Shown: piece by piece, positions 6,704 through 59,580 of the stretch
How the letters are laid out: every line of letters starts with the position of its first letter
How positions within the stretch are numbered: the stretch's first letter is position 1
Assembly (NCBI GenBank): GCA_001179505.1
Contig: CDMY01000433.1
Location: forward strand, 1-64,000
DNA from: Vitrella brassicaformis CCMP3155
Lineage: Eukaryota; Protista; Chromerida
Length of the DNA: 64,000 bases
Direction: 5' to 3'
Program-made: the position numbers and the translations under genes
Notes under the pieces: generated by a model
Databases searched by the model: none
What the model saw: only the letters and a program-made list of their open reading frames with translations
Told to the model about the DNA's origin: nothing

Positions 6704-7189
6704 ATGATGGAGGAGGATTGCTTTGTTTGTTCAATTCTCGGCCGTTGCGGCGCAATGCTCCTGCATGTGTCTCTCCTGGCTGTCTGTCTTTCTGGCGCCT
6801 GTGCGTGAGGGCATTTTGTAGTGCACATATGTCTGCAGGCCTATGTCTTTCTATCCACGCATTATGCAATTTTGGCCGTTCGTGTGTGATGTGGCTCGTG
6901 GCCGTTCCTCTGTGTCAGTCAGTCAGTCAGCCGCGGCTGCCCCTGCAGAGCGCTTCTTGCCGTGTGTAGATCGAGCCAATCGTTTTTCGTCTCTGTGCTG
7001 TGCTGTGCTGCTGGTTTGGTGTGTTGATTGGTGCATGGATGGCAGGTGTGCATGCGAGAGGCATGCAGGCTAGGCTGAGCGGACCGGGCGGCTGAGTTGA
7101 GCGGTTGTCGGAATGTGAATGGGAGACATGAGAGACGAATATGTAATGCATGGAGACATTACATCCCCAAACACCTTAGTGTGACGCAC

Positions 7190-9870
7190 ACACACCGAAT
7201 ATAAAATGCAGTCAGCGATCGATGCAGTGTCACCATGTGCCTGCTCCCTCCTCACGTACACCTTGGACTTGCCGCCCGTCTGGATCTGCTGCAGGTCCTC
7301 GTGGTGGCCGATGTATTTCCGCGTGTGTGTGCAGCAGCAAGCCCGCCACGCACCCTCCGTGTGTATGAGTGTGTGTGTGTGTGCAGATACGCGACAGCCA
7401 CGAACGCAAACATCGCGACAACGAGCACTCAGGATATAAAATGTAGGCAGCGATGTAATTTGGGCCCTCCCTCCCTGTCTCTGTCTGAACGCCCCCCTGA
7501 GCGCCCCCCTCACGTACACCTTGGGCTTGCCGCCCGTCTTGATCTGCCGCACTGCCGGGTCCTTGTGGCGGGCGATGTACTGCCGGGGCTGCTTCATGTT
7601 CATGTCGTCCAGGGCGGGGCTCGTCAGGGCACTCTGGGCTGCGGCCGCCGCTGCCGCCAGTCGCACGCTTGTCGTGGGCAGCGGGGCGGCGACGGCCGGC
7701 TGGTTGATGATGGGGGTCTGATGACACACAACGACAGACAGACAGACAGACAGACAGGAAGGGATGAAATGGATACGTTTGTATGGTCTGTCCTCTCCCT
7801 CATGGACGCACCTGTCTGGCAGCCGCGGCATTCTCCGACTTGGCCACGACGGCCTCGAGCTCCTGCAGCGACGGCAGCTCTATACGAGCATCTGTGTGGT
7901 GGAAGCCACACACACAGAGGAACAGAACAGATGGCAGAGTGTGAGCATGTGCAGGGATAGGGGTGCGGTGTCTGTGGGGGGGGGGGCGCTAGTAATGTAA
8001 TGTCTATCTCACGTCCAGATGCTCCTCGCCGCTGAATTCCCTGGCCTTGTCCAAGTCCTTCTCGTAGTTGACAGCCGTCTCGGCGGCCCTCAACCACACG
8101 ACTCCCTGAACGGACCACATGTAACACACAGCACACACAACACACAGCACACAACACACAGCCCGTATGATGGTGATGCCCCGCCGATATCCAGGGTGGC
8201 TCGGGAAGCCTTCATCATGGGCGTGGTCCCGTGACTTCCAGAGTGCCTCGGAACGCCTGCCCGAACCTGAGAAGAGAGACAAGGAAGGAAGATGAGACAG
8301 ACACATAAGTATGCTCTCTTCTCGTCCTCACTCTGCGGCGAAATGATGGTGCGTTTTGAATTTTTCTTCGTTGCTGGGGCTCTCTTCGGGGTCTTCACCT
8401 GCAAGCAACAGAGGCCCTTGACAGCGGTCTGCTGCTGTTCTTGGTGACGCATCTGCTGATGACTTGCCTGCACACATACGCATGGATGCGCGACAAATAG
8501 ATATACATAAACGCAAGAATGGTTTTCGCTGTATAGCGGTGCAGCGTGAGTGCGTGTCTCGCTTCCTGTCTGTTTCTTCAACCTTATCAACGATGTCCTC
8601 ATTTTACTGACCTGTACATGCGAGTGCCCGGACGGTCCGCCCTGTATATATATGGGGGGTGATTCGTGGTGTCCATGAAGAAGCACATGTCGAAATCGGT
8701 GAGCTTGACGGTGCCGTCAGCCGCAAACATCAAATTCTCGCCCTTGATGTCACGATGAATCAGCTGCAAACAGGAACACACCAAGAAGGGCCTCGCGTTC
8801 TGTCCGCGACCTGCTCTTCTCTCGCCGCTCACCCCAAGCTCTTCGTGCATCAATATATTGTCGTGCATATACTGGAGCGCGAAGAGCGCCTGCATGACAA
8901 TTCTCTTCACTTCACTCTCCTGGTTATGCAGCACATCAGGGCTCGGCAGCACGTCAAAGATGTTAGCGCCGGGCAGCTTCTCCATTGCCACGTAGAGGTG
9001 CTCGTTGTCCTCGAGCAGCTCGAAAATCTGGACAATGTGTGGATGATCGTTGCGGAGAAGCCTCTTGTAGATGTCCTTCAGATATGAAATGTCCACAAAT
9101 GGCCTGCATGCGTGGATGGACATTTGATCATGGACATTTGATCTGTGGATGGCCTACTCGAAGAGCTTCCTCTCGATGCGTTTGAGGGCACGGTCTTTGC
9201 CCTTCTTCCCCACCCATTCCCCTTCTCCTGTCACTCGAGCTCATCTTGCATCAGGCGTCTTATGATGTTTTCGATGCTCTCGTTGGAGGGCTGTCGCGCC
9301 TGTCCTGCGGCGACAGCCCCCAAATCTTGACTTTGATGCTGTTTGAGAGGCTCCCCTTGTTGAGGCTTGCCGTGCTTAGTCTTGCCCTTCTCGTTCTTGA
9401 TGAGCTCTCTAATGTACTTCTCGCCTGCGGTCTCACGATTTCGCTCGGCCTCGGCCACTTTGCCGCGGTTGACAATCTCTTGCAGCTCCTCGGCGAAGGC
9501 GGGGTCGGCTGAGGACATCGGCGTCGGCTCGGTGGCAACCGCCTTCGATCTCGTCTGGCTACTTTGATCTCGTCTGGCAACGTGCACAGCTTCTGGAGTG
9601 CCGCCTCGAATGCACTCTGCAACTGGCTGAGAGTTTCTCCAGGGGCCCCTCAAAGGCGCAGCTCTCTGACCAGGTCTTGGACAAGTACCTTGTTGCGAGG
9701 CAGGATGAACTCTCGCCCTCAATCTTGACGAAGAGGTCGAAGGTGTCAGGAATGTAGTAGATGTCCTCATGGCCATGTACAGAAGGAATTAGTCTGTCCA
9801 CTGAGGAGAACGGACTGAATCCTGGATTTTGCAGAAAAGAAAAGCCGTCGCCGTCTCAAATCTCGACGGA
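7190..9870 (-). pseudogene. Degenerate chimeric locus: unknown N-terminal part, partial CAMK/CDPK-like protein kinase, unrelated downstream exons; carries the shared leader and trailer motifs
   Basis: Kinase subdomains IV-VII are present (DHPHIVQIFELLEDNEHLYVAMEKL, LIHRDIKGENLMF, VKLTDFD, GTRMY). I see no Gly-loop or APE/C-lobe. A GKDRALKRIERK segment is out of frame with the upstream ORF and followed by TAG. Short tandem duplications lie at 9116-9143 (14 bp, perfect) and about 9543-9580 (19 bp, imperfect). Confidence 0.6.
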
Positions 9871-17685: not shown

Positions 17686-20679
17686 TCACATAATCATACA
17701 GCAAGGCCCACACGCATGTTTGTGTTTCTTTATGATCTCTAGGATCTCAGGCATTTCAGCCGCCATGTCCTCTGCCGTCTTCCCCTGTCACATAAGCAAC
17801 CGTCGACAATCGACTCTGTGTGAATCTGTATGTGTGCACTTACAGCATTATTCTTCATCAACAAGAGAGACCTTCCACTCCACTCCAATCTGTCATGCAG
17901 AGAGAGACAGAGAGAGAGGGGGTGTGATCTTGAGCGTCGTTCCTGCATATCTCACAGCTTAGTCACAGCCGCAGCTTGGCCTCCTTCGACAGCCAAATGA
18001 AGTGCCGTGTTGCCATCCTGTGCATGTCATGCACAGGGAGAGCAACAAGCAGATGACAGGCATTCTGTGTGTACTGAAGTGTGTGTCTCTCACCTTGTCC
18101 ACCTGTGTGCCAAGGCCTCTTCCCCCTTTGGGATGCATGACGTTCATCACATCGACATGACCAGAGTGGGCAGCCAAATGGAGTGGCGTGTAGCCCTCCT
18201 GCAATCAGCACCAGCACACAATCCACGTTATACATGAGGCGTCAGAGACAGATCTTCAACTCTCTTACATTGGTGCGTACATCCAGCACTTCTCGACCAC
18301 CCCACTTCAACCTGTCATGCAGGGAGATAGAGGGAGAGAGGGTGTGCGTGGAATTCGTCCTTTCTGTCGTCCATCGGTGTTTCTCTCACAGCTGAGACAC
18401 AGCGGCAGTGCGACCATCCCGGGCAGCGAAATGGAGCGCCGTCCAGCCACCCTGTGCGCGTCATACACACAATCAAGGGAAAGACAAACAAACAGATCAG
18501 AGACGGTCCATGTATGTTCACATGTGTGTCTCTTACATCTGTTTGCTGCATCAGTATCTTATTCCCCCCTTTGGCATGCATGGCCTTCATCACATCAACT
18601 TGACCATGCCCGGCAGCATTTATGAATGGCGTGACGCCGTACTGCAATCAGCACATGCATACAATCCACACAACGAGGCGGCAAAGCTATTCTCCCTTTG
18701 TACGTTGCTTCGTGCATCGAGCAGCTCGCCGTCCCACTCCAGCCTGACTTAGAGAGAAAGACGATGTGTGTGAATTCAAGTCACTCATCTCTGTCTCTCA
18801 CAGCTGAGACACAGCGGCAGTGTGACCCCCCGGGGCAGCCATATGGAGTGCCGTGGAGCCACCCTGTGCGTGTCATACACACAATCAAGGGAAAGACAAA
18901 CAAACAGATCAGAGACGGTCCATGTATGTTCACACGATGTGTGTCTCTTACATCTGTTTGCTGCATCAGTATCTTATTCCCCCCTTTGGCATGCATGGCC
19001 TTCATCACATCAACTTGACCAAAGTTGGCAGCAATTATGAATGGTGTGGAACCAAGCTGCGATCAGCACAATGCAACGCACGATGAGGTGTCAGAGACAT
19101 ATGTGTCTCACTAATTTCGTGTACGTTGTTGCGTGCATCGAGCAGCTCACGGCCTCCCCAGTTCAGCCTGACCCATGAAGAGAGAAAGAGGACTCGTGAG
19201 ACGTTCACATGCGTCTCTCACAGCTGAGACACAGCGGATGTGTGACCCGTCTCAGCAGCCATATGGAGTGCCGTCCAGCCATTCTGTGCGTGTCATACAC
19301 ACAATCAAGGGAAAGACAAACAAACAGATCAGAGACGGTCCATGTATGTTCACATGATGTGTGTCTCTTTACATCCATTTGCTGCATCAGTATCTTATTT
19401 CCCCCTATGGCATGCATGGCCTTCATCACATCAACTCGACCATTCTGGGCAGCAATCATGAATGGCGTGTGGCCAGCCTGCGGTCAGCACATGAAGACAA
19501 TCCACACAACGAGGCGGCAAACACAAACAATTGACACCAACAGACATCGAAAGTATGTCTATTCCTTTACCTTGAGACGTGCATAGAGCAGCTCGCTGCC
19601 GTTCACTTCAGCAGTTGAGACACAGCGGCACTGTGACCATTCTCGGCAGCCAAATGGAGAGCCGTCCAGCCGTTCTGCATTTCCATGAAGCCAGGATATC
19701 TCTTCATCACCAGCAACAAAATTGTCCAGTTGTGTTAGTACATCTTTTGTTTGCTGCAGGATCGATGGCCCGTATCGATCATAGCATACCGACATGATGC
19801 CAACGCGACCTTCACGTGCAGCGCAGATGAAGGGTGTGTTCTGAGGGCCAAACAGAAGACTACTGACCGTCTTTCCCCTCCACCACTGCATACCTCGTTG
19901 TTGTCTCGTCTGTCGAGTACTTTGATGCCGTGCATCTCAATGAGCCGATTGACGGACTGCACATCATCCGTCCGCACGGCCTCAAAGATGAAGGATGCTG
20001 CACGCACACAAAAGGGTATAGAGGATTGTGTTTTGCCTCTGTTTGTGCCTACCCTGAGATGAACGCTGGTACTTCTGTATGGTCTTCATCACTTCAGACT
20101 TACCTGCCTGGGCTGCTACCTCGAACGGTGTCTTGTTGTACTGCAATCAACGCACATGAAATCGACGTAAGGATGTTTCACACATGCACATGTACAATCT
20201 TACCCATGGCGCTGCGGTGGTGTTACGTGCATCAAGCAGTTCAGGGCCCCACTTCAGCAGCTGATCGACAGCCCCAACCGCGCCAGTGAACGCAGCATGG
20301 TGCAGCGCAGTGTTAAAATTCTGCACCCCAAATGCAGGACATCTACTCATGTCAAGCCGTAGGCCTTCGGTTGTGCCGTACGATGTCTGATTGATGCAGA
20401 ATTGCTCGGCCACGTTACCCGCGTGTGCAGCCACGAGGAAGGGTGTTACCCTCGCCCCATCTTCAACAAGTTGCCCTTCTGTGTCAAGTATTTCTGGGCC
20501 ATGTTTGTCGATGAGGTCGCTGACAGTCTGCGCACCGTTCGCCTTCACAGCCTTGAATATGGGTAGCTGCAGACAAAACTCCAGCAATGACAACACACAC
20601 ATCGTCAGAGTCTCTGAGATTTTCCCACCATTGCTGCGCGCCGCAGAGAGAGTTACACCGGAACGCCACGCGCATGCAT
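17686..20679 (-). CDS. Ankyrin-repeat protein (about 12 repeats), predicted C-terminal CaaX, one apparent 1-nt frameshift
   Basis: Repeated exons TPFxxAAxxGxVDVMKAMHAKGG and GWTALHxAAxxGHxAAVSQLLxW. The spliced frame is consistent except at about 19604. The terminal exon reads GKTAEDMAAEMPEILEIIKKHKHACGPCCMIM*. The start codon is uncertain. Confidence 0.8.
17940..19700 (-). repeat. Five tandem ~390-430 bp exon-intron units within the ankyrin gene
   Basis: The anchor CAG(C/T)T(G/T)AG(A/T)CACAGC recurs at about 17956, 18389, 18801, 19221 and 19612. The intron text CATACACACAATCAAGGGAAAGACAAACAAACAGATCAGAGACGGTCCATGTATGTTCAC is identical in three units. Confidence 0.9.
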
Positions 20680-43512: not shown

Positions 43513-45696
43513 ATGTCGTTTCTGGCGGAGACGGAACGCCGAATCGACAAGCTGCTCCACGAGTGAGAGACGAAGAAACTCGCGCCACTCTGTCATTGCA
43601 TGGCTGTGTTTGTCTGTCCTGCACTGCAGTCTTGAGGTTGATGAGGCCGTGCGCACGCCAGCCAGCGCCCCGCTGCCGCCCGTTCAGAAGGTGGCGAGGC
43701 GGCTGGCCGACATGGACGAGGAGGATGACTGGGCACTGCCGCCCAGAAGGGGCACACACCTCCACACACGCCCCGCGCCAATCGACACGAGCCCACACAC
43801 CAGACCACGTGCGTCAGTCGGGATGGATCCATGGATACATATGTGCAGACAGAGCCGCACAATGTTATGCACTCCAGGCCAGGCCTCATGCCTTGTGTGT
43901 GTTGCCGTCAGTGTGTGTGAGGGCGGTAGAGAGGAGCCAGGCCGAGGTGCAGAGCCTGCAGGACGAGTCGAGACGCCAAAAGAGACAAATTCTCATGCTC
44001 AGCGAGGTAAGTAGGTGCACTGACCATGCATCCACACAGGCCGAATGGATGGACGCCCCCAGGTTTCGTCAATTAATGTGTATGTGTAGGACTGTCGGCG
44101 GCACGCGTTGGAGGCTGAGCGGTCCCGAGCTCTGGCCGCCAAGCTGGAGGTGGCCCAGCGACAGAGCAGCGATGAGAGGGTCAAACTACTCAGCCAAATC
44201 GCTGAGGTCAGTCATTCGGCCGGCCAGCCAATCACACATAGACACAGACGTACAAGACCATGGGCATGAATTGCCTCGTGCAGCTTCGTGCTGACGTGGC
44301 GGCGTGTCGTCACGAGAATGAGACGCTGAGGCGGCGCAACGCGGCTGACGACCTCCGGGAGCAGGAGATCCGCGCGCAACTCGAACAGCACATGGACCAA
44401 AACACAACTCTCACACAACAATACCAGGTAGGCGCGGTTTGCCGGCCAGGTCAGGTCAGATGAGGCATTCATTTGTTTGGGCGTGGCGTGCGTGTTGTGG
44501 GGATCGTATCGGTTGCAGGATGCGTGTCTGGGTCAGCAGCGGCTGAGTGGCGAGCTGCTGGAGGCTGACAAGGTCGCCGCCGACATGAGACGGGCAGTGC
44601 AGCCCCTGCTCATCGACAGGTAGACCACCATCAGCCATTTCCCCATTGGCTGTCCGCCGCATGTAGGTCTGCGTTGATGGCGTTTGTGTCACGGCTCCTC
44701 TCCCTGACCGTCGACACCTTCTTCGACCCAACACCATTCTTCAAGGCAAGCAAGGCACGCACCGCACACACCCAGAGAGAGACAAGTATCGTATGTATGC
44801 CGGCCACTGTCCATCTCTTCCTGTCAGAATGATCGCACGGTGAGTGGGGAGGGCCGTGCGAGAAGTGCACCGCCCAAATACACCAGGGGAGTGCCCATGC
44901 GGCTCCAGAGACGAGTCGAGGTGCGTACCACCACATCCAAGAGTGTGTGAGTGCGATGGTGTGATGATGTGTGTGACGGCTGCCTGCCTGCCTGTCTGCG
45001 TGTAGGCCCGCCGGATGGGGGAGCTGTGGGAGCTGCTTGAGCGACGTGAGTGAAGGCGTGGACATTGCAGCCAGCTGGCGGGCCTGCGTCTCTCGATATG
45101 CATGTCTGTCTACGTGCTGTATGTATGTCTGTGTGTGCAGAGCGTCAGGAGCTCCGTCAGATGTCCAAGGACCTCCTGACAGTCGCAGCCCAAACCCTCG
45201 AGGAAAGCCAACGGACACAAGACGTACGCAATCCAATCCAATCCACACACAGACAGACAGGCAAAGCACATGCATGTACACAAATTGAATGCATTCACGT
45301 CTCGTGATCGATCCCCACGTGTGTGTGTGCTCTCGGTGTGTCATCCATTCATCTATCAATCAGGTTGCACTCAAGTGTCCGCTGGCCCCATTGGCCAGCG
45401 ACATTCCCGAGCTGCTGGACGAGCTGTCCCGGACGCTGCCGAGCCTCACCGGTGTGGATAAGGGGCCCATCGACATCCGAGAGGGGTCGGCCGGCAATGT
45501 GTGGCTGGGGCGGGAGAGGTACGTGCTGCGCCTCATGAAGGACATGACAGAGAAGTGCGCATACCTGGCAAAACTCGAGAAGGCCGCAGAGAAACAAAGG
45601 GGCGGGGCGGGGGTGTGCCGCGACATATGCTATGGCGTCAACCACTACGGTCAGAGGATCCACGGCAGGCCGGGGTGGTGCTCTCTGTGGCCCTGA
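43513..45696 (+). CDS. Coiled-coil protein of unknown function
   Basis: MSFLAETERRIDKLLH start. Heptad-rich exons (AVERSQAEVQSLQDESRRQKRQILMLSE, LRADVAACRHENETLRRRN, ERQELRQMSKDLL) have canonical splice sites. Stop at 45696. Confidence 0.65.
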
Positions 45697-45934
45697 ATGA
45701 GTGCCAGATGCGTGATTGATTGATGTATGGTCAGCTGATTGATGAGCTGGCGAGGCGAGCGATTGGCTAGAGTCAGCTAGGGAGGCAGGCGGTGTGGTGA
45801 ATGGGATGCCTGGATGGACGCGTGAGTGAGTGAGTGCTCCCACCAACCGATCGACGAGACACAGAGCTGATGGCATGGATGGCATGGTCTGCACGATTCG
45901 ATTCGTCCATTCAGTCAGCACATGTAATACCACT

Positions 45935-48235
45935 GACTGATATAAAATGCAGGCAGCGATATAAGTAAGTCACGCCACCCTCTCTGTCACGTGCACACAC
46001 CTGGGCCTACATGTCTTTCTCCCACCCACCAAAGTGCTACGACGAGCTAGACACGGAGTCGGCGTTCTGTGAGACAATCCTTGTCAACGAACGCAAACAT
46101 CGCGACAAGGTGCACCAAGGATATAAAATGTAGGCAGCGATGTTATTTAACGCCCTCTAAGGACGTGTCCAGCTCACGCACACCTTGGGCTTGCCGCCCG
46201 TCTTGATCTGCCGCACTGGCAATTCCCGGGGCCCTCCTCGCGGCTGCGGGCGTCGTCCAGCAGCTGACGCGCATACTCGACCACCTCGTGGTCACTCAAT
46301 GCACGATCTGATCCAGACAGACAGACAGACAGACAAGTGAGGGGAGGGCACCAATGCACAAACGAGACACGGGGGGGAAGGGTAGCCCCACCAGCGGTTG
46401 GCGGCGTGGGTGGCGGCTTCAATAAGGGGCGGCCAGTGGGGGTGCAGATGAGGCGGCGGCAGCCTGTTCCTCGGCTGTGAGTAAAAACAAGAAGGAGCTC
46501 CACCATGTAGCACCGATAGGCGTGCATCTTTATCCCTCCCTTCCTACCGGGCTTTGACTGAAATCCCTTCTCTTTGATGACACGGGTCATCTTCTCTCTG
46601 AGGGCACGATACCTCCGAACGTTCTCGATGCCTGCTGCCCTGAAACAGTGGCGGCCGGCCTAACCTCACACACGAAAGACAGAAGACAGCCCGCAGGTCA
46701 TGCTCCGCTTCCATCCATTCGGTTTGTCAATGCCGCCCCCTTCATGTACCTCGTTTGGAGCGTAAAGGAAGTCTTCGATGGCCTCCTCCACCTCCTTCTG
46801 GGACACGTTGGGGTCCTCGCCCAAAAAGGCCTCGCCCAGCTCGATCACCCGCCAAAAGAGGGCCAGCTCCTCCTCCGTGGGGTCGCGGGGAGGAGTCCGG
46901 CCCGCCCTGACGGCCAGCTCGGCGGCAAGGGCTCGCTCGGCGGCTGTTGGTGGGCGGGGGCGGGTGGAGGACTGCTGGGTGGAGGGCGGGGGAACAGAGG
47001 GCAGCATGGCGCACAGTGAGGGACCGTGGAGGGCACAGGGTGGGGGTTTGACAGAGGTATCTTCTGTAGGTGGGCACGAAATATCTTCTCTTCGACGGCA
47101 CGATACCTGTCAACGTCCTCCTCGGATGATACTCGGAAGAGGTGGCGGGCGGCCTGACCTCACGCACAAAAGACAGCAGACAGCCCGCAGGTCATGCTTC
47201 GTTTGCATCCATTCGGTTTGTCTAATGCCGCCCCCTTCATGTACCTTGTTTGGAGCGTAGACGAACTTCTCGTTGGCCTCCTCGACCTCCTTCCGGGGCA
47301 CGCTGGGGTCCTCGCTCAGCTCGATGACCCGCCAGAAGAGCGCCAGCTCCTCCTCGGTGGGGTCGCCGGGGGGAGTCCGGCCCGCCCTGATGGCCAGCCA
47401 GCTCAGCGGCTGTAGGTGGGCGGGGGCGGGTGGACTTCTGTTGGGTGGAGGGCGGGGGAACAATGGACAACATGGCACAGTGAGGGGGAGCGTGGAGGGC
47501 AAGGAAGGGCAGGGCGAGCAGCGAGCAGGGACGTCTCTCGTCAGCGAGGGAGAATCACCTCTCCTCGGCGAGCTCAGGCATGTCTGGCGGCTTCAGTGGG
47601 GGTGAGGGGCGGCCAGCGGGGGTGCGGTTGAGGCGGCAGCGGCAGCCATTTCCTGGGCTGTGAGTAAAAACAAGGAGGAGCGCCACCATGTACCACCGAT
47701 AGGCGTGCATCTTTATCCATCCTGTTCCTTCCTACCGTACAAGCGAGCATGCTCCATGTATTCCTCCTTCTTCCACGGGTCCGAGGCGGCGTGGAACCTG
47801 CAGATGTCCTCAAAGGAGGTTGCCCGGAAGACGTGGCGGGCGGCCTGACCTCACGCACAGAAGACAGCAGACAGCCCGCAGGTCATGCTCCGCTTCCATC
47901 CATTCGGTTTGTCAATGCCGCCCCTTCATGTACCTCGTCAGGAGCGTAGAGGAAGTCTTCGATGCCCTCCTCCACCTCCTCCCGAGCTCAGCTCGATCAC
48001 CCGCCGCATGATATGATGTATGATATGTGGCATATCCTCCTCTCAGGCGGGCGAGGCAAGCTGTCCAGTGGACAGGGCAGAACAGGGGGCATCCGAGGGC
48101 ATCTTGCAAGGGCAGTGGTGAGCAGCATGATAGCGAACGGGGCAACTAAAAGTTTAAAGGTTGTGCCGGCAGATAAAGGGTTATTGCTGCTTCAGGCCGT
48201 CTCGTCGAGAAAAAATCTCGACTGCGAGCTTGACG
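45935..48235 (-). repeat. Mosaic repeat locus: leader hairpin, three tandem exon-intron units (A, B, C), captured AP2-gene fragment, doubled trailer
   Basis: Units encode (R)DPTEEELALFWRVIEL..EDP.V...EVEEA.E.F.YAP.E followed by a conserved intron GTACATGAAG...GTCAG/GTTAG. Unit C (ATG 47007) splices to a short intact ORF; A and B are frameshifted. Homologous to 57057-59580 in inverted orientation. Confidence 0.8.
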
Positions 48236-48466: not shown

Positions 48467-51036
48467 ATGGCAGCTGCAGCTGTGAGTCATCGCGGGATGA
48501 AGCGTCCGGTGGATTTCTCTCAAGTTTGTGGGGAGGACGGGGACCACTGGCATGACGATCATGGCGTGGGGGGTGCGGTGTCGCCGCCGTCAGGTGGGGA
48601 GGGAAGGAGGGAGGGATGGAGAGAACGGGAGATGGGGAAGAGACCACCTGTCGTGCGTTGCGTTGGTTGCACCTGCTGTTGTTGGTGTGCAGGAGGGATG
48701 GACAAACGTCACCATTCCGATGGCGACTTGAGTGCGTGGGGTCACATGGGGCTGCCCGTCGGCGAGCAGATGGTCGGCGAGACCCCACGGTGTGCTGCGG
48801 GTGCGGCGTCCTCTTCACCCAGATACGACATGGGCTCGTCCGTCCCTCCCCCTCCCCCTCCCCCCCTTCCATCCCTGCCCCTCATGGCCGATGAGGGCGG
48901 CCACGGCCACCCTACACACCCAATGGCTGATGCGGCTGAGGACCACGAGCTGGCCATCCCGCCCAACATCATCGCTGAGGCCCTCCTGCGGTGTCTGCTG
49001 GACCACACCAAGCCGGGCAGCCCTCTGGGGATCCAGTGGATGCCCGCTGACACCGCCATGGGGGCGGCCGGCGGCTGCTTTGTCGTACAGATAGAACACG
49101 CCGACCAGCTCTATGACGGCGGGGTCTTCAAGCCACCCACACTCGCCAGATCAGACATCGAGGCATCCCTCAAACAGGTCAGCCAGTCAAGAGGCGGATG
49201 GCGGTCTCCACGGGGCTGGAATAGAATAAGACGTCTTGTGTGTTTGTGCGTGGTGTGTGTGCAGGCGTTGTCGAGTCGCAATCGGCTGTTCTCTGACGAG
49301 TCCCACTGGATCGACCCCTCCCGTGTTGGTGTGCGCAAGGACGGGATGCCGATCCCCTGGCCGATTGCGTCGCAGTGGACCCAGATGGCCACCAACAACT
49401 ACCACTCGATGCCCCCGGCCCTTCCCATGTCGCCCCCCCACGGCCAGCCGTGCATCCCTCTCCCTCCCCCCGCCCCCATGCACCACCTGCCGGTCATGTC
49501 GCCCACCCACCTCCCCCTCCCTCCCCTCCCCATCCCCCTGCCGATGCTGCCCGTCCTCCAGCGGCAGCAGGGGGGCATCGGCGGGGGCGGTGGGCCTCAC
49601 CACCCACAGATGCGCCGCATCATGCCGCTGGTGCCACCCAATCACAGCAACATGGGGCAGGGTGGGGGTGCACCCCCATGGCCATTCGACACACTCCCGG
49701 AACATATCAACAGTAAGCACAGCACCTACCTATCAGATCTGACACGCGTCTCGTTTGTGCATTGCATTGGTGCCCTCCCCTCACTTGTCTGTCTGTCTGT
49801 CTGTCTGGATCAGATCGTGCGTTGAGTGACGACGAGGTGGTCGAGTACGCGCGTCAGCTGCTGGACGACGCCCGCAGCCGCGAGGAGGGCCCCGGTTTGA
49901 ATGTGTCGTGGGACAAGCGGTCCAGGGCCTTCAAGCTGTCATTGAGGGACCCGAAGTTTCGACTCTTCCGTGAGTTCCGCCCGGCGGAGAAGACCGTCAA
50001 GGGCGTCTGTGAGGCGCTGGCCAAGGCACTCAAGCTGCGGGACGATGCCAGGGCCGGCAGGCTCACTAACCAGGCCGGAGGGCCACACATTCACTCACCC
50101 AGAGGCAACCCAAGCAGAGGTACGTACGTACGTATGCACGTACAAACGGCACCTACACACCACACCATACCAGACCGACGGGAACTTGTTTGTATGCTTG
50201 TGGGGCTTGTGGATGTCTGCCTCTCTGTCTTGTCTTTGTGGCGCACGTATACATCCATGCAGCGATGCCGCGGATGCCGCCAGCAGTGTGTGAGCCGCCT
50301 TCCATGGGGCCCCCGCCCATCCCGGTCGACGTATCCGCATTCGCAGACAGCACGCGGGAAGAAATCGCCGGTGGGTCGCTCAAGCGCCCACACTACACCC
50401 CTTTCAATGGCACACGCACCTAACCTGAAAAAATACCTGAACCGATGGATGTGTTGCTTGCAGCGAAATTTCCAGCGGCGTTTCGTCAGCTGACTCCATC
50501 CGACCTTCGTCAGGCGGCTCAGGTGCTGTTGAACCGGCTGCGTGCGCAGTGCTCGATGGAGGAGTGCGGCGTGGGAGAGGGCCGGAAGGGCGGGCTGGGG
50601 ATCAACCTGCAGACACAGACGACCAGTTTCGCCGTCAACATCCAGGTGGGCGGCAAGACCCACTACGGCGGCTCCCACCACCCCCCCTCACCGACCTTTG
50701 AGGGCATCGTCACGGCACTCAAGGCCGCCGTCGGATCCAGAAACAACCTCACACACTCCCTCGGGTAGGTAGGGTAGGGGACACACAACACACCCAACTC
50801 AGTCAGTGCTGACAGGAGCGGCCGGGCTGGGGGCATCGATACATCGCACAGTCTGTCTGACCAAAACACGTGTGTGTGTGTTTTTGTGTGTGTGTGTGTG
50901 TGTGTTCCTGTGTAGGATGCCGGGTTTCATCCCCATGGTGCGTGTGGATCAGGCGTGGATAGCGCTGCTCGAGGACAAACAGACCGTCGACCAACAACAC
51001 GACACACAGCCTCAAACAGAACGGGTCAGTGAGTGA
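48467..51036 (+). CDS. ApiAP2-like transcription factor with three divergent AP2-type domains
   Basis: Three segments share the pattern G-strand-F-strand-F/H-P-helix(AL..A...R): LGIQW..GCFVVQI..VFKPP..IEASLKQALSSRN, GLNVSWDKRSRAFKLSL..REFRP..VCEALAKALKLRD, and LGINLQ..SFAVNIQV..HHPP..IVTALKAAVGSRN. They are separated by Pro/Met-rich linkers. Start and end are approximate. Confidence 0.6.
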
Positions 51037-57056: not shown

Positions 57057-59580
57057 AAGCTCGCAGTCGAGATTTTTTCTCGACGAGAGACGGCTGGCGA
57101 CAACAGCAATTGTTATCTCCGCAACCGCGCTAAACTTTCAGTTGCTCCTTTCGTTACATTTATCATGCTGCAGGACCCGCCCGGACTTGAGGAGGAGATC
57201 TGAGGTTCTTCTTCTCCCAGCTTGTCAGCGCGCAGGGCGCATGGAACAACGCGTACGTTGAGAAACAGAAACAGCCACGCAGACGCAAAGCGGAAGAACG
57301 AACAGCATGCATCTGTTCTTCCTCCCTGTTCAGATCGAGAAACTGGACGCGGAGAGGGATGCACTGAAGAGTGAGCGATTGGGCGGGTCCCACTTGTCTG
57401 TCCCCCATGCGCCCATCTGTCTGGCTGGCTGGCTGAGTGAGACATCTGCGTGCTTTCTCTCGTGTGTACGCATGAATGTATGCAATGAATGCAGAGAGGC
57501 TCAAAGACACCACTGGTCAAGGTCAAGACGGATAGCTTTGCTACTTCCGCCTCGCCTCTTTCCTGACTGAGGATACGCATGCCTTCTTTTGCGCTGTACT
57601 CAAACACGCAGGTCAGGAGGCTGGAATCGGAGGTCAAGGATCTCAAAGGTCAGTCAGTCACGAGTTGTCAGTCATATCTAAGCATCTCCTTTTGCCACCT
57701 GCGTGCAGAGCGCCTCAAGACCAAGAGTGTGACGGCCAGCACTCACCCCAACAAGGTCAATGGACAAAGAAGCGAGGATCACGCCACGGAGTGACTGATG
57801 ACCGAGGCCTCGCCTCCTTTGTGAATCGATTGATGTTTAGATTGTCATGCTGCAGGACCCGTCCGGACTTGAGGAGGAGAGGACCCCAACTCATCAGGCC
57901 AGGAGCTGCAGCTGGACGAGGCCACCGCGCCTTCTCGCCGGCGCCTGACGAGGTACATGAAGGAAGACCCGGGGCAGCATTAGACAAACTGAATGGACGG
58001 TTGATGAAACGAAGCATCGCTGGCTGTCTGCTGTCTACCGCGCGCGTTCAGGCCTCCCGGCGCTGTTTCCCTCGGACGAAGGAGCTTAAGGAAAAGTTCG
58101 ATCACTTTGAGCGTTGCCTTCAAGCTAGACCACGAGAACAAGCGGCTTGTTTTTGTGGCGAACAAGCCGTTCGTGCGGCCTATTTCGATGGCGCCAAGCG
58201 GTGCGTGCTGACGGTGGATGGTGGACAGGGGGTGGAACCCTTCGTTGTCGCGATGGACTACCTCGGTAAGCAGGGGAGGCTTTCGACTCGCTGCTGGCTG
58301 TATGGATGCGTTCATGGTCAGGTGGTGAGTGGATGATGGTCACGGAATTTCAGAGGCTGTACAACATCCCCGACATGTGCGAGAGACTCAAGGGTGCGAG
58401 TGACGAGGACGGGGCTTGGAGTAGGGCACATACCGCCCTCCACCCAGCAGAAGTTCACTCGCGCCCGCCCACCTACAGCCGCGGAGCTGGCTGGCCATCA
58501 GGGCGGGACGGACTCCCCCCCGCGACCCCACGGAGGAGGAGCTGGCCCTTTTCTGGCGGGTGATCGAGCTGGGCGAGGACCCCAGTGTGTCCCGTAGGGA
58601 GGTCGAGGAGGCCAACGAGAATTTCGTCTACGCTCCTGACGAGGTACATGAAGGGGGCGGCATTGACAAACCGAATGGATGGAAGCGGAGCATTGCCTGC
58701 GGGCTGTCTGCTGTCTTTTGTGCGTGAGGTCAGGCCGTCCGCCACGTCTTCCGGGCAACCTCCTTTGAGGACATCTGCAGGTTCCACGCCGCCTCGGACC
58801 CGTGGAAGAAGGAGGAATACATGGAGCATGCTCGCTTATACGGTAGGAAGGGACAGGATGGATAAAGATGCACGCCTATCGGTGGTACATGGTGGCGCTC
58901 CTCCTTGTTTTACTCACAGCCCAGGAAATGGCTGCCGCCGCCGCCTCAACCGCACCCCCGCTGGCCGCCCCTCACCCCCCACTGAAGCCGCCAGCCACGC
59001 CGCCAACCGCTGGTGGGGTTACCCCTCCCCCCCGTGTCAACAGCCAGGCAGCCCCCGCATGTCATGCGGCCCGCATACGGGCACCCTTTGCCCACTCGCC
59101 CGCCCCCAACACCAGCACCACCACCACCACCAGCCCTGCCGAGGTACGAGCCAGTCCTAGGATTTCACGTGGGCGACCAGCGGAGCGCACGATGACGCTC
59201 GTGCGAGCCGTCCACCACCAGCCCCCCATCTTACTTACTGTCTGGCGGAGGACCAAGTAGACAGACAGACAGACAGAGAGATGATTGACTGAGTGTGCGT
59301 GACTGTGTGTGGGGGGAGCCGCATTCCAAGGAGGTAGCCAGGCGCCTTTCTCTTGGATTGGTGGGCGCTAAATTTCATCGCTGCCTGCATTTTATATCCT
59401 TAGTGCTCGTTGTCGCGTCCGTTGATACATGCTGTTATAAGCAAGACTTCCAATCTTCCCAATGACCGACTGTGTCTAGCTCGTCGTGGCAGTATGGCCT
59501 CGTGCAGGTGCGAGGATGATATGTAGGCCCACCTTGAGGGTTGGTGCCTTATGTCGCTGCCTGCCTTTTTATGCATTGTG
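57057..59580 (+). repeat. Mosaic repeat locus: leader hairpin, small coiled-coil exons, two exon-intron units (D, E), doubled trailer
   Basis: Leader AAGCTCGCAGTCGAGATTTTTTCTCGACGAGAGACGGC at 57057. A ~36-bp direct repeat lies at about 57165 and 57846. Unit E (about 58625-58995) differs from unit A (about 47585-47950, inverted) at only about a dozen positions. Trailer motifs at 59377 and about 59551. Confidence 0.8.

What the first reader, a model, noticed from the sequence alone, without database searches (positions are those of the whole stretch)
46175..46372. Three-way chimeric junction with a captured intron-exon piece of the neighbouring AP2 gene
Seen: 46226-46368 is the reverse complement of 49748-49895 (intron 3' end plus exon DRALSDDEVVEYARQLLDDARSREEGP), with a 5-nt deletion and about 3 substitutions, and it stops just before the second AP2-like domain. 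On one side it joins unit C through a short shared (C)G(T/C)GTC. On the other, after a few filler bases, it joins a 44-bp stretch matching 7511-7554 with 1 mismatch, 39 kb away. The retained intron shows DNA-level capture, not retroposition. Inference: template switching or microhomology-mediated repair, or capture by a rolling-circle/MULE-type element. Antisense or small RNA from the copy could affect the AP2 gene.
Basis: seen in the sequence. Interest (0 to 1): 0.75.

Follow-up and report, generated by a model that had tools for sequence, protein, structure and literature searches.

The report
Patchwork last exon from neighbouring genes
In the alga Vitrella brassicaformis, a 200-base patch copied at the DNA level from two nearby genes replaced the tail of a small local gene and is annotated as its last exon; this is a clear but ordinary product of error-prone DNA repair.

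Summary
Window 46226-46371 is an inverted copy of 49745-49895: 94% identical, three substitutions outside the joint, one 5-nt gap. It exists only twice in the 72.7-Mb Vitrella brassicaformis genome. After a 7-nt filler it joins 46173-46218, which equals 7509-7554 with one mismatch; that core occurs three times, all in this window.

New points:
- The patch lies in a publicly annotated minus-strand gene (P0002, 167 aa).
- The copied intron end supplies the acceptor of that gene's last intron.
- The copied exon is read in its original phase.
- The 46-bp piece comes from the exon-intron border of a kinase gene (P0003). It is read out of frame and supplies the stop codon.
- A paralogous unit at 58.4-59.5 kb matches on both sides but carries 324 unrelated bases instead.
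- The joints show 3-6 nt of microhomology or filler. There are no terminal repeats or target duplications.

Best reading: break or stalled-fork repair with template switching. A transposon is not supported. The antisense idea does not fit, because the copy is sense within P0002. The "AP2" label is unproven: no Pfam match, and the fold match is only compatible.

This scan noted similar gene-fragment patchworks beside the same 22-nt motif elsewhere in this genome. No read or RNA data could be reached.

The parts
46174..47007 (-). Annotated chimeric gene P0002 (167 aa, Vitrella brassicaformis CCMP3155). Exon 1 is 47007-46750, exon 2 is 46659-46548 and exon 3 is 46307-46174. All introns are GT-AG.
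   Evidence: Word search returned P0002; sequence. Exact three-exon mapping reproduces the protein and its stop.
46372..46547 (-). Unit-derived 5' part of P0002 intron 2. It still holds the family's native exon-3 acceptor (exon would start at 46474), whose reading frame stops after 18 codons.
   Evidence: Alignment of the four units. Acceptor scan. A 7-nt indel relative to the unit at 58.4-59.0 kb.
46308..46371 (-). Copied 3' end of the donor gene's intron, supplying polypyrimidine tract and AG for the annotated intron 2. 46366-46371 is the microhomology joint J1.
   Evidence: The paralogous unit diverges exactly after the shared CGTGTC.
46226..46307 (-). Copied first 82 nt of the donor exon, read in the donor's own phase (phase 1). 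It corresponds to P0002 residues 124-151, of which 26 of 28 match P0001 residues 344-371.
   Evidence: Of the three substitutions, two are synonymous and one changes Asp to His.
46219..46225 (-). 7-nt filler (GAATTGC on the sense strand) between the two copied pieces (joint J2).
   Evidence: No template for it near any of the loci involved.
46173..46218 (-). 46-bp copy of the end of the kinase gene's penultimate exon plus 9 nt of its intron. It is read one base out of the kinase frame and supplies the TGA stop of P0002 at 46174-46176.
46087..46172 (-). Downstream module holding the genome-wide 19-22-nt motif (core 46123-46141), 33 nt after the stop. It is closest to a copy on contig C33 (83-88%), not to the copy beside the kinase donor (70%). 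It was therefore not brought in with the 46-bp piece (joint J3).
49745..49895 (+). Donor 1: intron end plus exon start of P0001 (625 aa, + strand, 48497-51030).
7509..7554 (-). Donor 2: end of the penultimate exon plus donor site of the protein kinase gene P0003 (388 aa).
   Evidence: Pkinase domain at E 4e-20.
59039..59362 (+). The 324 bp that the paralogous unit carries in the position of the patch. It is flanked on both sides by sequence colinear with 46366-46989 and 46002-46155.
   Evidence: It is unique in the genome apart from low-complexity hits.

Best explanation
A DNA break or stalled replication fork in the 3' part of a small, lineage-specific gene ("unit C") was repaired by copying instead of simple rejoining.

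The proposed path is as follows. A free 3' end primed on 3-6 nt of microhomology in an intron of the divergent neighbour gene 3.4 kb away, in inverted orientation, and copied about 146 nt. It then left that template and gained 7 unexplained bases. Next it copied 46 nt from a kinase gene 38.7 kb away on the same contig. Finally it rejoined the original locus just upstream of its downstream motif module. About 324 bp of the original tail was lost.

By chance the copied intron end brought a working-looking acceptor, and the copied exon is in the same phase as the recipient's exon 2. The gene predictor therefore reads a chimeric last exon: 28 donor-derived residues, then 15 out-of-frame residues and a stop from the kinase piece.

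Shown: the pieces, their donors, the joints, the replacement and the annotated model. Inferred: the repair pathway, the single-event order, and whether the new exon is actually spliced.

I take the product to be a neutral or decaying by-product rather than a selected new function.
For: - Two short ectopic copies lie side by side. Their divergence is similar and low: 3 of about 140 positions and 0-1 of 46.
- Both donors are single-copy genes on the same contig, one inverted and one direct.
- Both pieces cross exon-intron borders, so DNA was the template.
- Joints: GTC / CGYGTC microhomology at J1. At J2 both donors share CCCGG at the break, with a 7-nt untemplated filler between the pieces.
- The recipient's flanks are colinear with a paralogous unit that has 324 unrelated bases instead.
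- Direction of copying. The exon piece encodes the N-terminal helix of a module repeated three times in P0001 and present in its only relative, P0005. The kinase piece is part of a longer exon that has an older tandem copy at its own locus.
- No terminal inverted repeats or target duplication were found.
- The same neighbourhood holds another recent inverted duplication, 405 bp at 95% identity.
[quoted passage not shown] Template switches between diverged sequences give complex rearrangements (PMC4215184, abstract).
Against: - No reads, long reads or second strain could be examined, so neither the assembly nor the single-event order is proven.
- J3 is ambiguous: about 15 nt between the kinase piece and the motif module match only a copy on another contig.
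- The module itself is closer to that contig's copy than to the paralogous unit. There may therefore be a fourth, older patch or more than one event.
- Other notes of this scan report many gene-fragment patchworks next to the same motif in this genome. This hints at something more systematic than a one-off repair accident.
Confidence: 0.6

Rival explanations
1. The patch is one instance of a genome-wide, motif-associated process in Vitrella. In this process DNA copies of gene pieces are assembled just upstream of a conserved 22-nt signal, giving cassettes with a conserved shell and variable cargo. The process could be an undescribed gene-fragment-copying element or a targeted recombination system.
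For: - The motif lies 33 nt after the chimeric exon's stop and has about 1300 copies genome-wide, against 0-1 for the control.
- Donor 2 also lies 56 nt upstream of a motif copy, in the same orientation.
- Earlier notes of this scan (s1-201680, s1-242742, s1-221653, s1-252824) describe fragment patchworks bounded by the same signal. Those notes are unchecked.
Against: - Only about 22 nt are conserved around the motif in 40 sampled loci, so there is no element body or termini.
- The motif module here belongs to the recipient's own flank and was not moved with the pieces.
- The unit's other variable segment (exon 2) has no outside donor.
- I ran no genome-wide association test.
Confidence: 0.15
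2. Two or more separate small insertions occurred at different times, for example the kinase piece first and the neighbour-gene piece later, each by ordinary end joining. They only look like one compound event.
For: - The 7-nt filler separates the pieces.
- The module next to the kinase piece has a different history.
- Divergence estimates rest on very few sites.
Against: - Both pieces show similarly low divergence.
- They abut within 7 nt at a site where a paralogue shows a single replaced block.
- Two independent hits at the same few bases are less parsimonious.
Confidence: 0.12
3. Capture by a transposon that picks up host gene fragments, of Pack-MULE, Helitron or similar type.
For: Gene fragments with retained intron sequence, stitched together, are typical cargo of such elements (my own knowledge).
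Against: - No terminal inverted repeats, target-site duplication or 3' hairpin at or near the patch borders.
- The patch is only about 200 bp.
- The composite and each piece are not multicopy.
- The flanks are the recipient gene's own paralogous sequence.
- The genome is reported to hold only 1.5 Mb of transposable elements (PMC4501334).
Confidence: 0.05
4. Assembly artefact: a chimeric contig that joins reads from the three loci.
For: The assembly is short-read based (PMC4501334), and I could not inspect reads.
Against: - The copy differs from its donor at three substitutions and a 5-nt indel.
- It carries a 7-nt filler found nowhere nearby.
- The pieces (146, 7 and 46 bp) are shorter than a read pair would need for a false join.
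- There are no N in the window.
Confidence: 0.03

Closest known systems
Templated insertions and complex rearrangements by microhomology-mediated template switching (MMBIR / FoSTeS; also synthesis-dependent end joining with "filler DNA")
   Same: Several short ectopic templates from the same chromosome region, in either orientation, are joined at 2-6 nt microhomologies or with a few untemplated bases. The event comes with loss of the original sequence. No transposon hallmarks are present (PMC8421209 and PMC4215184 for the mechanism).
   Different: This is seen only as a fixed germline product in one assembly. The pathway, the enzymes and the one-event order are inferred. One joint (J3) is not cleanly resolved.
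Chimeric genes and exon shuffling by DNA-level partial duplication (my own knowledge of the Drosophila and plant literature)
   Same: A partial copy of one gene, including its intron end and acceptor, is placed in sense orientation inside another gene and read in frame as a new terminal exon.
   Different: The captured piece is tiny: 28 codons, only the leading helix of a module. The recipient is an orphan gene with decayed paralogues. Expression and function are unknown.
Pack-MULE / Helitron gene-fragment capture
   Same: A mosaic of intron-bearing gene fragments from different genes.
   Different: No termini, no target duplication, single copy, and flanks that are the recipient's own sequence.
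Retrogene or retroposed fragment
   Same: A piece of a gene copied to a new place.
   Different: Intron sequence is kept in both pieces and there is no poly(A) trace, so RNA was not the intermediate.

Membership tests
Microhomology-mediated template-switch / templated-insertion repair product | Two or more ectopic template-derived segments inserted at one site | tested here: met
   146-nt and 46-nt copies of single-copy donors lie 7 nt apart.
Microhomology-mediated template-switch / templated-insertion repair product | Short microhomology or a few untemplated bases at each joint | tested here: met
   J1 has GTC exact, or 5 of 6 for CGYGTC. At J2 both donors share CCCGG and a 7-nt filler lies between the pieces. 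J3 is ambiguous, with a possible TGA/TGAG overlap.
Microhomology-mediated template-switch / templated-insertion repair product | Templates nearby in cis, in either orientation | tested here: met
   The donors are 3.4 kb away (inverted) and 38.7 kb away (direct) on the same contig.
Microhomology-mediated template-switch / templated-insertion repair product | Loss or replacement of the original sequence at the recipient site | tested here: met
   The paralogous unit is colinear on both sides and has 324 unrelated bp in that position. That the paralogue shows the ancestral state is inferred.
Microhomology-mediated template-switch / templated-insertion repair product | Made in a single repair event | not testable with these tools
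   Only the similar low divergence of the two pieces speaks for it.
Pack-MULE / Helitron capture | Terminal inverted repeats with target-site duplication, or TC...CTRR ends with a 3' hairpin | tested here: not met
   The repeat scan of 45700-46700 finds no repeats that flank the patch and no hairpin at its ends. An 8-nt direct repeat 316 bp apart is within chance expectation.
Pack-MULE / Helitron capture | Element present in several copies | tested here: not met
   The patch pieces exist only at donor and recipient.
Retroposed copy | Introns absent from the copy | tested here: not met
   58-64 nt of intron are retained in piece 1 and 9 nt in piece 2.
AP2 / ApiAP2 DNA-binding domain (PF00847) in the donor gene P0001 | Significant match to the AP2 profile | tested here: not met
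   No AP2 hit at E up to 10 for P0001 or its ORFs. No PDB sequence match.
AP2 / ApiAP2 DNA-binding domain (PF00847) in the donor gene P0001 | Three-stranded sheet packed on a helix, matching solved AP2 domains | tested here: inconclusive
   The model has pLDDT 84 and the order helix, three strands, helix. PfSIP2 AP2 matches at Z 6.1, rmsd 2.8 over 60 residues. Toxoplasma mitoribosome proteins match at Z 6.1-6.3. These are tied with frataxin and HPF folds at Z 5-6.
New chimeric gene (exon shuffling) | Captured exon joined in frame through canonical splice sites | tested here: met
   The public model P0002 maps exactly with GT-AG introns. The captured exon keeps phase 1.
New chimeric gene (exon shuffling) | The chimeric transcript exists | not testable with these tools
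The competing native acceptor at 46474 gives a stop after 18 codons. The public models are Augustus predictions with RNA-seq intron hints (PMC4501334).

The most novel reading that the evidence does not exclude
The junction is a dated, dissectable example of a Vitrella-wide process that builds and rebuilds the 3' ends of fast-evolving genes. In that process DNA copies of pieces of nearby genes are stitched in just upstream of a conserved 22-nt signal present about 1300 times. This would be a targeted gene-tail diversification or exon-shuffling system rather than a random repair scar.
Probability: 0.12. Interest if true: 0.7.

Novelty: new member of a known kind. Interest (0 to 1): 0.3.

Why it matters
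It is a clean, base-resolved example of how a few hundred bases copied during faulty repair can give a gene a new last exon. The intron end, reading phase and stop codon are all borrowed from two other genes. It comes from a free-living relative of apicomplexan parasites, where such events have hardly been described. On its own it changes no general picture. Its wider value depends on whether the many fragment patchworks beside the same 22-nt motif in this genome share one cause.

Tried and rejected
- Common-repeat origin of the fragment: rejected. There are two copies genome-wide.
- The 46-bp piece as part of the widespread motif module: rejected. Its core occurs only three times, all in the window. 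The adjacent module is closer to a copy on contig C33 than to the one beside the donor.
- Transposon hallmarks: none found.
- Known RNA families in 44-52 kb: none.
- A template for the 7-nt filler: none near any locus.
- An outside donor for the paralogue's 324 bp and for both versions of the unit's variable exon 2: none found. Recurrent capture in this gene family is therefore not shown.
- Relatives of the donor protein: the word search found only the protein itself. The full search of 1.84 billion representatives found only P0005 (E 3e-4), P0002 through the captured exon, and a low-complexity hit.
- Pfam and PDB sequence searches for AP2: negative.
It was redone by slicing database protein P0001.
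- No self-joined spliced model was sent to any search tool. The spliced proteins used (P0001-P0003) are database entries. Exons were concatenated only inside scripts, to check those entries against the window.

Full report
**Source and setting.** The window is contig C433 (positions 1-64000) of a 72.7-Mb assembly in 1064 contigs. Three database proteins encoded here are named as Vitrella brassicaformis CCMP3155. This matches the published assembly size and scaffold number (PMC4501334). GC content is 57.7% and there are no N.

**The observation.**
- BLAST of 45500-47000 against the window gives 46226-46371 against 49895-49745, reverse complement. It spans 151 columns at 94.0% identity, with 4 mismatches and one 5-nt gap, E about 1e-61.
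- The base-level alignment shows three substitutions in clearly donor-derived sequence. The fourth lies in the joint. The gap is one unit of a GCATT tandem pair.
- A whole-genome search finds only these two copies plus a microsatellite hit.
- 46173-46218 equals 7509-7554 with one mismatch. A 30-nt core of it occurs three times in the genome, all in this window, and never in the reversed control.

**What the donors are.**
- Donor 1 is P0001, 625 aa, on the + strand at 48497-51030.
- The copied stretch is the last 64-69 nt of its 101-nt intron (49713-49813) plus the first 82 nt of the next exon.
- P0001 has no Pfam domain even at E 10 and no PDB sequence match.
- In a search of 1.84 billion representatives it has only one weak true relative, P0005 (E 3e-4). 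The chimeric gene P0002 also appears, through the captured exon.
- P0001 contains three copies of an approximately 80-residue module, which P0005 shares.
- An AlphaFold model of module 2 (pLDDT 84) runs helix, three strands, helix.
- Its best structural neighbours are Toxoplasma mitoribosome proteins and the Plasmodium SIP2 AP2 repeat, at Z 6.1-6.3. These are tied with frataxin and HPF folds. "AP2-like" is therefore compatible but unproven.
- The captured exon encodes the leading helix of module 2 and stops just before the sheet.
- Donor 2 is P0003, a 388-aa protein kinase on the minus strand. The copied 46 nt are the last 37 nt of its penultimate exon plus 9 nt of intron.
- Both pieces cross exon-intron borders, so DNA was copied, not mRNA.

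**What the recipient is.**
- The patch lies in P0002, a 167-aa public gene model on the minus strand.
- Exact mapping gives exon 1 at 47007-46750, exon 2 at 46659-46548, intron 2 at 46547-46308 and exon 3 at 46307-46174. All introns are GT-AG.
- Intron 2 is therefore a hybrid: unit sequence followed by the donor's intron end.
- Exon 3 is the donor's exon piece read in its native phase 1. Of its 28 residues, 26 are identical to the donor's. It is followed by the 7-nt filler and then the kinase piece, read one base out of frame, whose GTGAG region supplies the TGA stop (46174-46176).
- P0002 belongs to a small family of "units" found only in this window: 46366-47035, 47083-47501 and 47577-47980 on the minus strand, and 58433-59038 on the plus strand.
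- The unit at 58.4-59.5 kb is colinear with the 46-kb locus on both sides of the patch: 46366-46989 with 59038-58433, and 46002-46155 with 59531-59363. Between these it carries 324 unrelated, genome-unique bases. The patch therefore replaced a block rather than being simply inserted.
- The family's native exon-3 acceptor survives at 46474, but its frame now stops after 18 codons because of a 7-nt indel.
- Whether the cell uses the native or the captured acceptor is unknown. The public models are Augustus predictions with RNA-seq intron hints (PMC4501334).

**The joints, read on the sense (minus) strand.**
- J1: the unit ends in CGTGTC and the donor reads CGCGTC before the common continuation. 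The crossover lies in GTC (46366-46368).
- J2: the donor-1 copy ends in CCCCGG, then comes GAATTGC, then the kinase piece. In the kinase gene the piece is preceded by CCCGG, so both donors share 5 nt at the break. No template for the filler lies nearby.
- J3: the kinase piece ends in GTGAG. The next 15 nt and the motif module match a copy on contig C33 at 83-88%. That is better than the module beside the kinase donor (70%) or the paralogous unit's module (68%).
- The module therefore did not travel with the kinase piece. It may itself be an older patch.

**Mechanism.**
- The evidence has four parts. There are two ectopic templates in cis, one inverted at 3.4 kb and one direct at 38.7 kb. The joints show microhomology or filler. 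The original sequence was lost. No terminal repeats, target duplication or extra copies were found.
- This is the signature of template switching during break or fork repair (MMBIR/FoSTeS, or synthesis-dependent end joining with filler DNA; PMC8421209, PMC4215184).
- The low and similar divergence of the two pieces fits one compound event but cannot prove it.
- A further recent inverted duplication lies nearby: 47577-47979 against 59001-58598, 95% identical. The region seems prone to such events.

**The antisense idea.** P0002 and P0001 are divergent neighbours whose start codons lie 1.5 kb apart. The inverted copy is therefore sense within P0002, and its RNA would not pair with the donor's mRNA. 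Antisense would need plus-strand transcription through 46173-46371, for which I have no evidence.

**The 22-nt motif.**
- The core ATCGCTGCCTRCATTTTAT lies 33 nt after the P0002 stop and 56 nt after the kinase donor piece, in the same orientation.
- It occurs about 1300 times in the genome at up to two mismatches, against 0-1 for the control.
- In 40 sampled loci only about 22 nt are conserved.
- In 14 of 40 loci a pyrimidine tract plus AG ends 0-15 nt upstream. Shifted control positions give 1-6 of 40 and the opposite strand gives 0 of 40.
- Earlier notes of this scan on other parts of this genome describe the same signal at the downstream end of gene-fragment patchworks and reject a Helitron end. 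I did not test that association genome-wide. It is the basis of the novel reading, to which I give 12%.

**Verdict.** The feature is real and well resolved. It is a three-source, possibly four-source, DNA patch that makes the annotated last exon of an orphan gene, most likely through template-switching repair. It is a new example of a known kind of event and of modest interest on its own.

**Limits.**
- No reads, RNA data or second strain could be reached.
- No self-joined spliced sequence was submitted to any search.

Noticed in passing
window 7436-7454, 45942-45960, 46123-46141 (sense on minus strand), 59377-59395 (sense on plus strand); genome-wide: The 19-22-nt motif ATCGCTGCCTRCATTTTAT(AT) has about 1300 copies in the genome against 0-1 for a reversed control, and only about 22 nt are conserved. 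A third of 40 sampled copies have an acceptor-like pyrimidine tract plus AG 0-15 nt upstream. Tandem arrays occur on contigs C416, C821 and C262. Its function is unknown. A resemblance to the dinoflagellate spliced leader is only my recollection and is untested.
   Followed up: partly
window 7160-7585: The kinase gene P0003 has a doubtful 3' end. Its annotated last intron (7517-7175) contains two motif copies and an older tandem copy (7243-7321, 81%) of the exon end. The terminal exon is about 15 nt and sits behind a weak acceptor.
   Followed up: partly
window 48497-51030: P0001 is an orphan protein with three copies of a module about 80 residues long (helix, three strands, helix). Its only detectable relative among 1.84 billion representatives is P0005. 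The fold is compatible with AP2-like domains, including those in Toxoplasma mitoribosome proteins, but the matches are not decisive.
   Followed up: partly
window 47577-47979 and 58598-59001: A 405-bp inverted duplication at 95% identity joins two units 10.6 kb apart. Exon 2 of the unit exists in two unrelated versions, one shared by the units at 46.6 and 47.1 kb and the other by those at 47.8 and 58.8 kb. No outside donor was found in the genome.
   Followed up: partly
window 46416-46474: The unit's native third-exon acceptor is intact in P0002's intron 2. A 7-nt indel relative to the paralogue makes its frame stop after 18 codons. The gene tail was therefore already damaged, or was damaged at the same time as the patch arose.
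   Followed up: yes
window 17875-19505: A tandem repeat of about 420 bp, in three to four copies at 69-75% identity. It was not examined.
   Followed up: no
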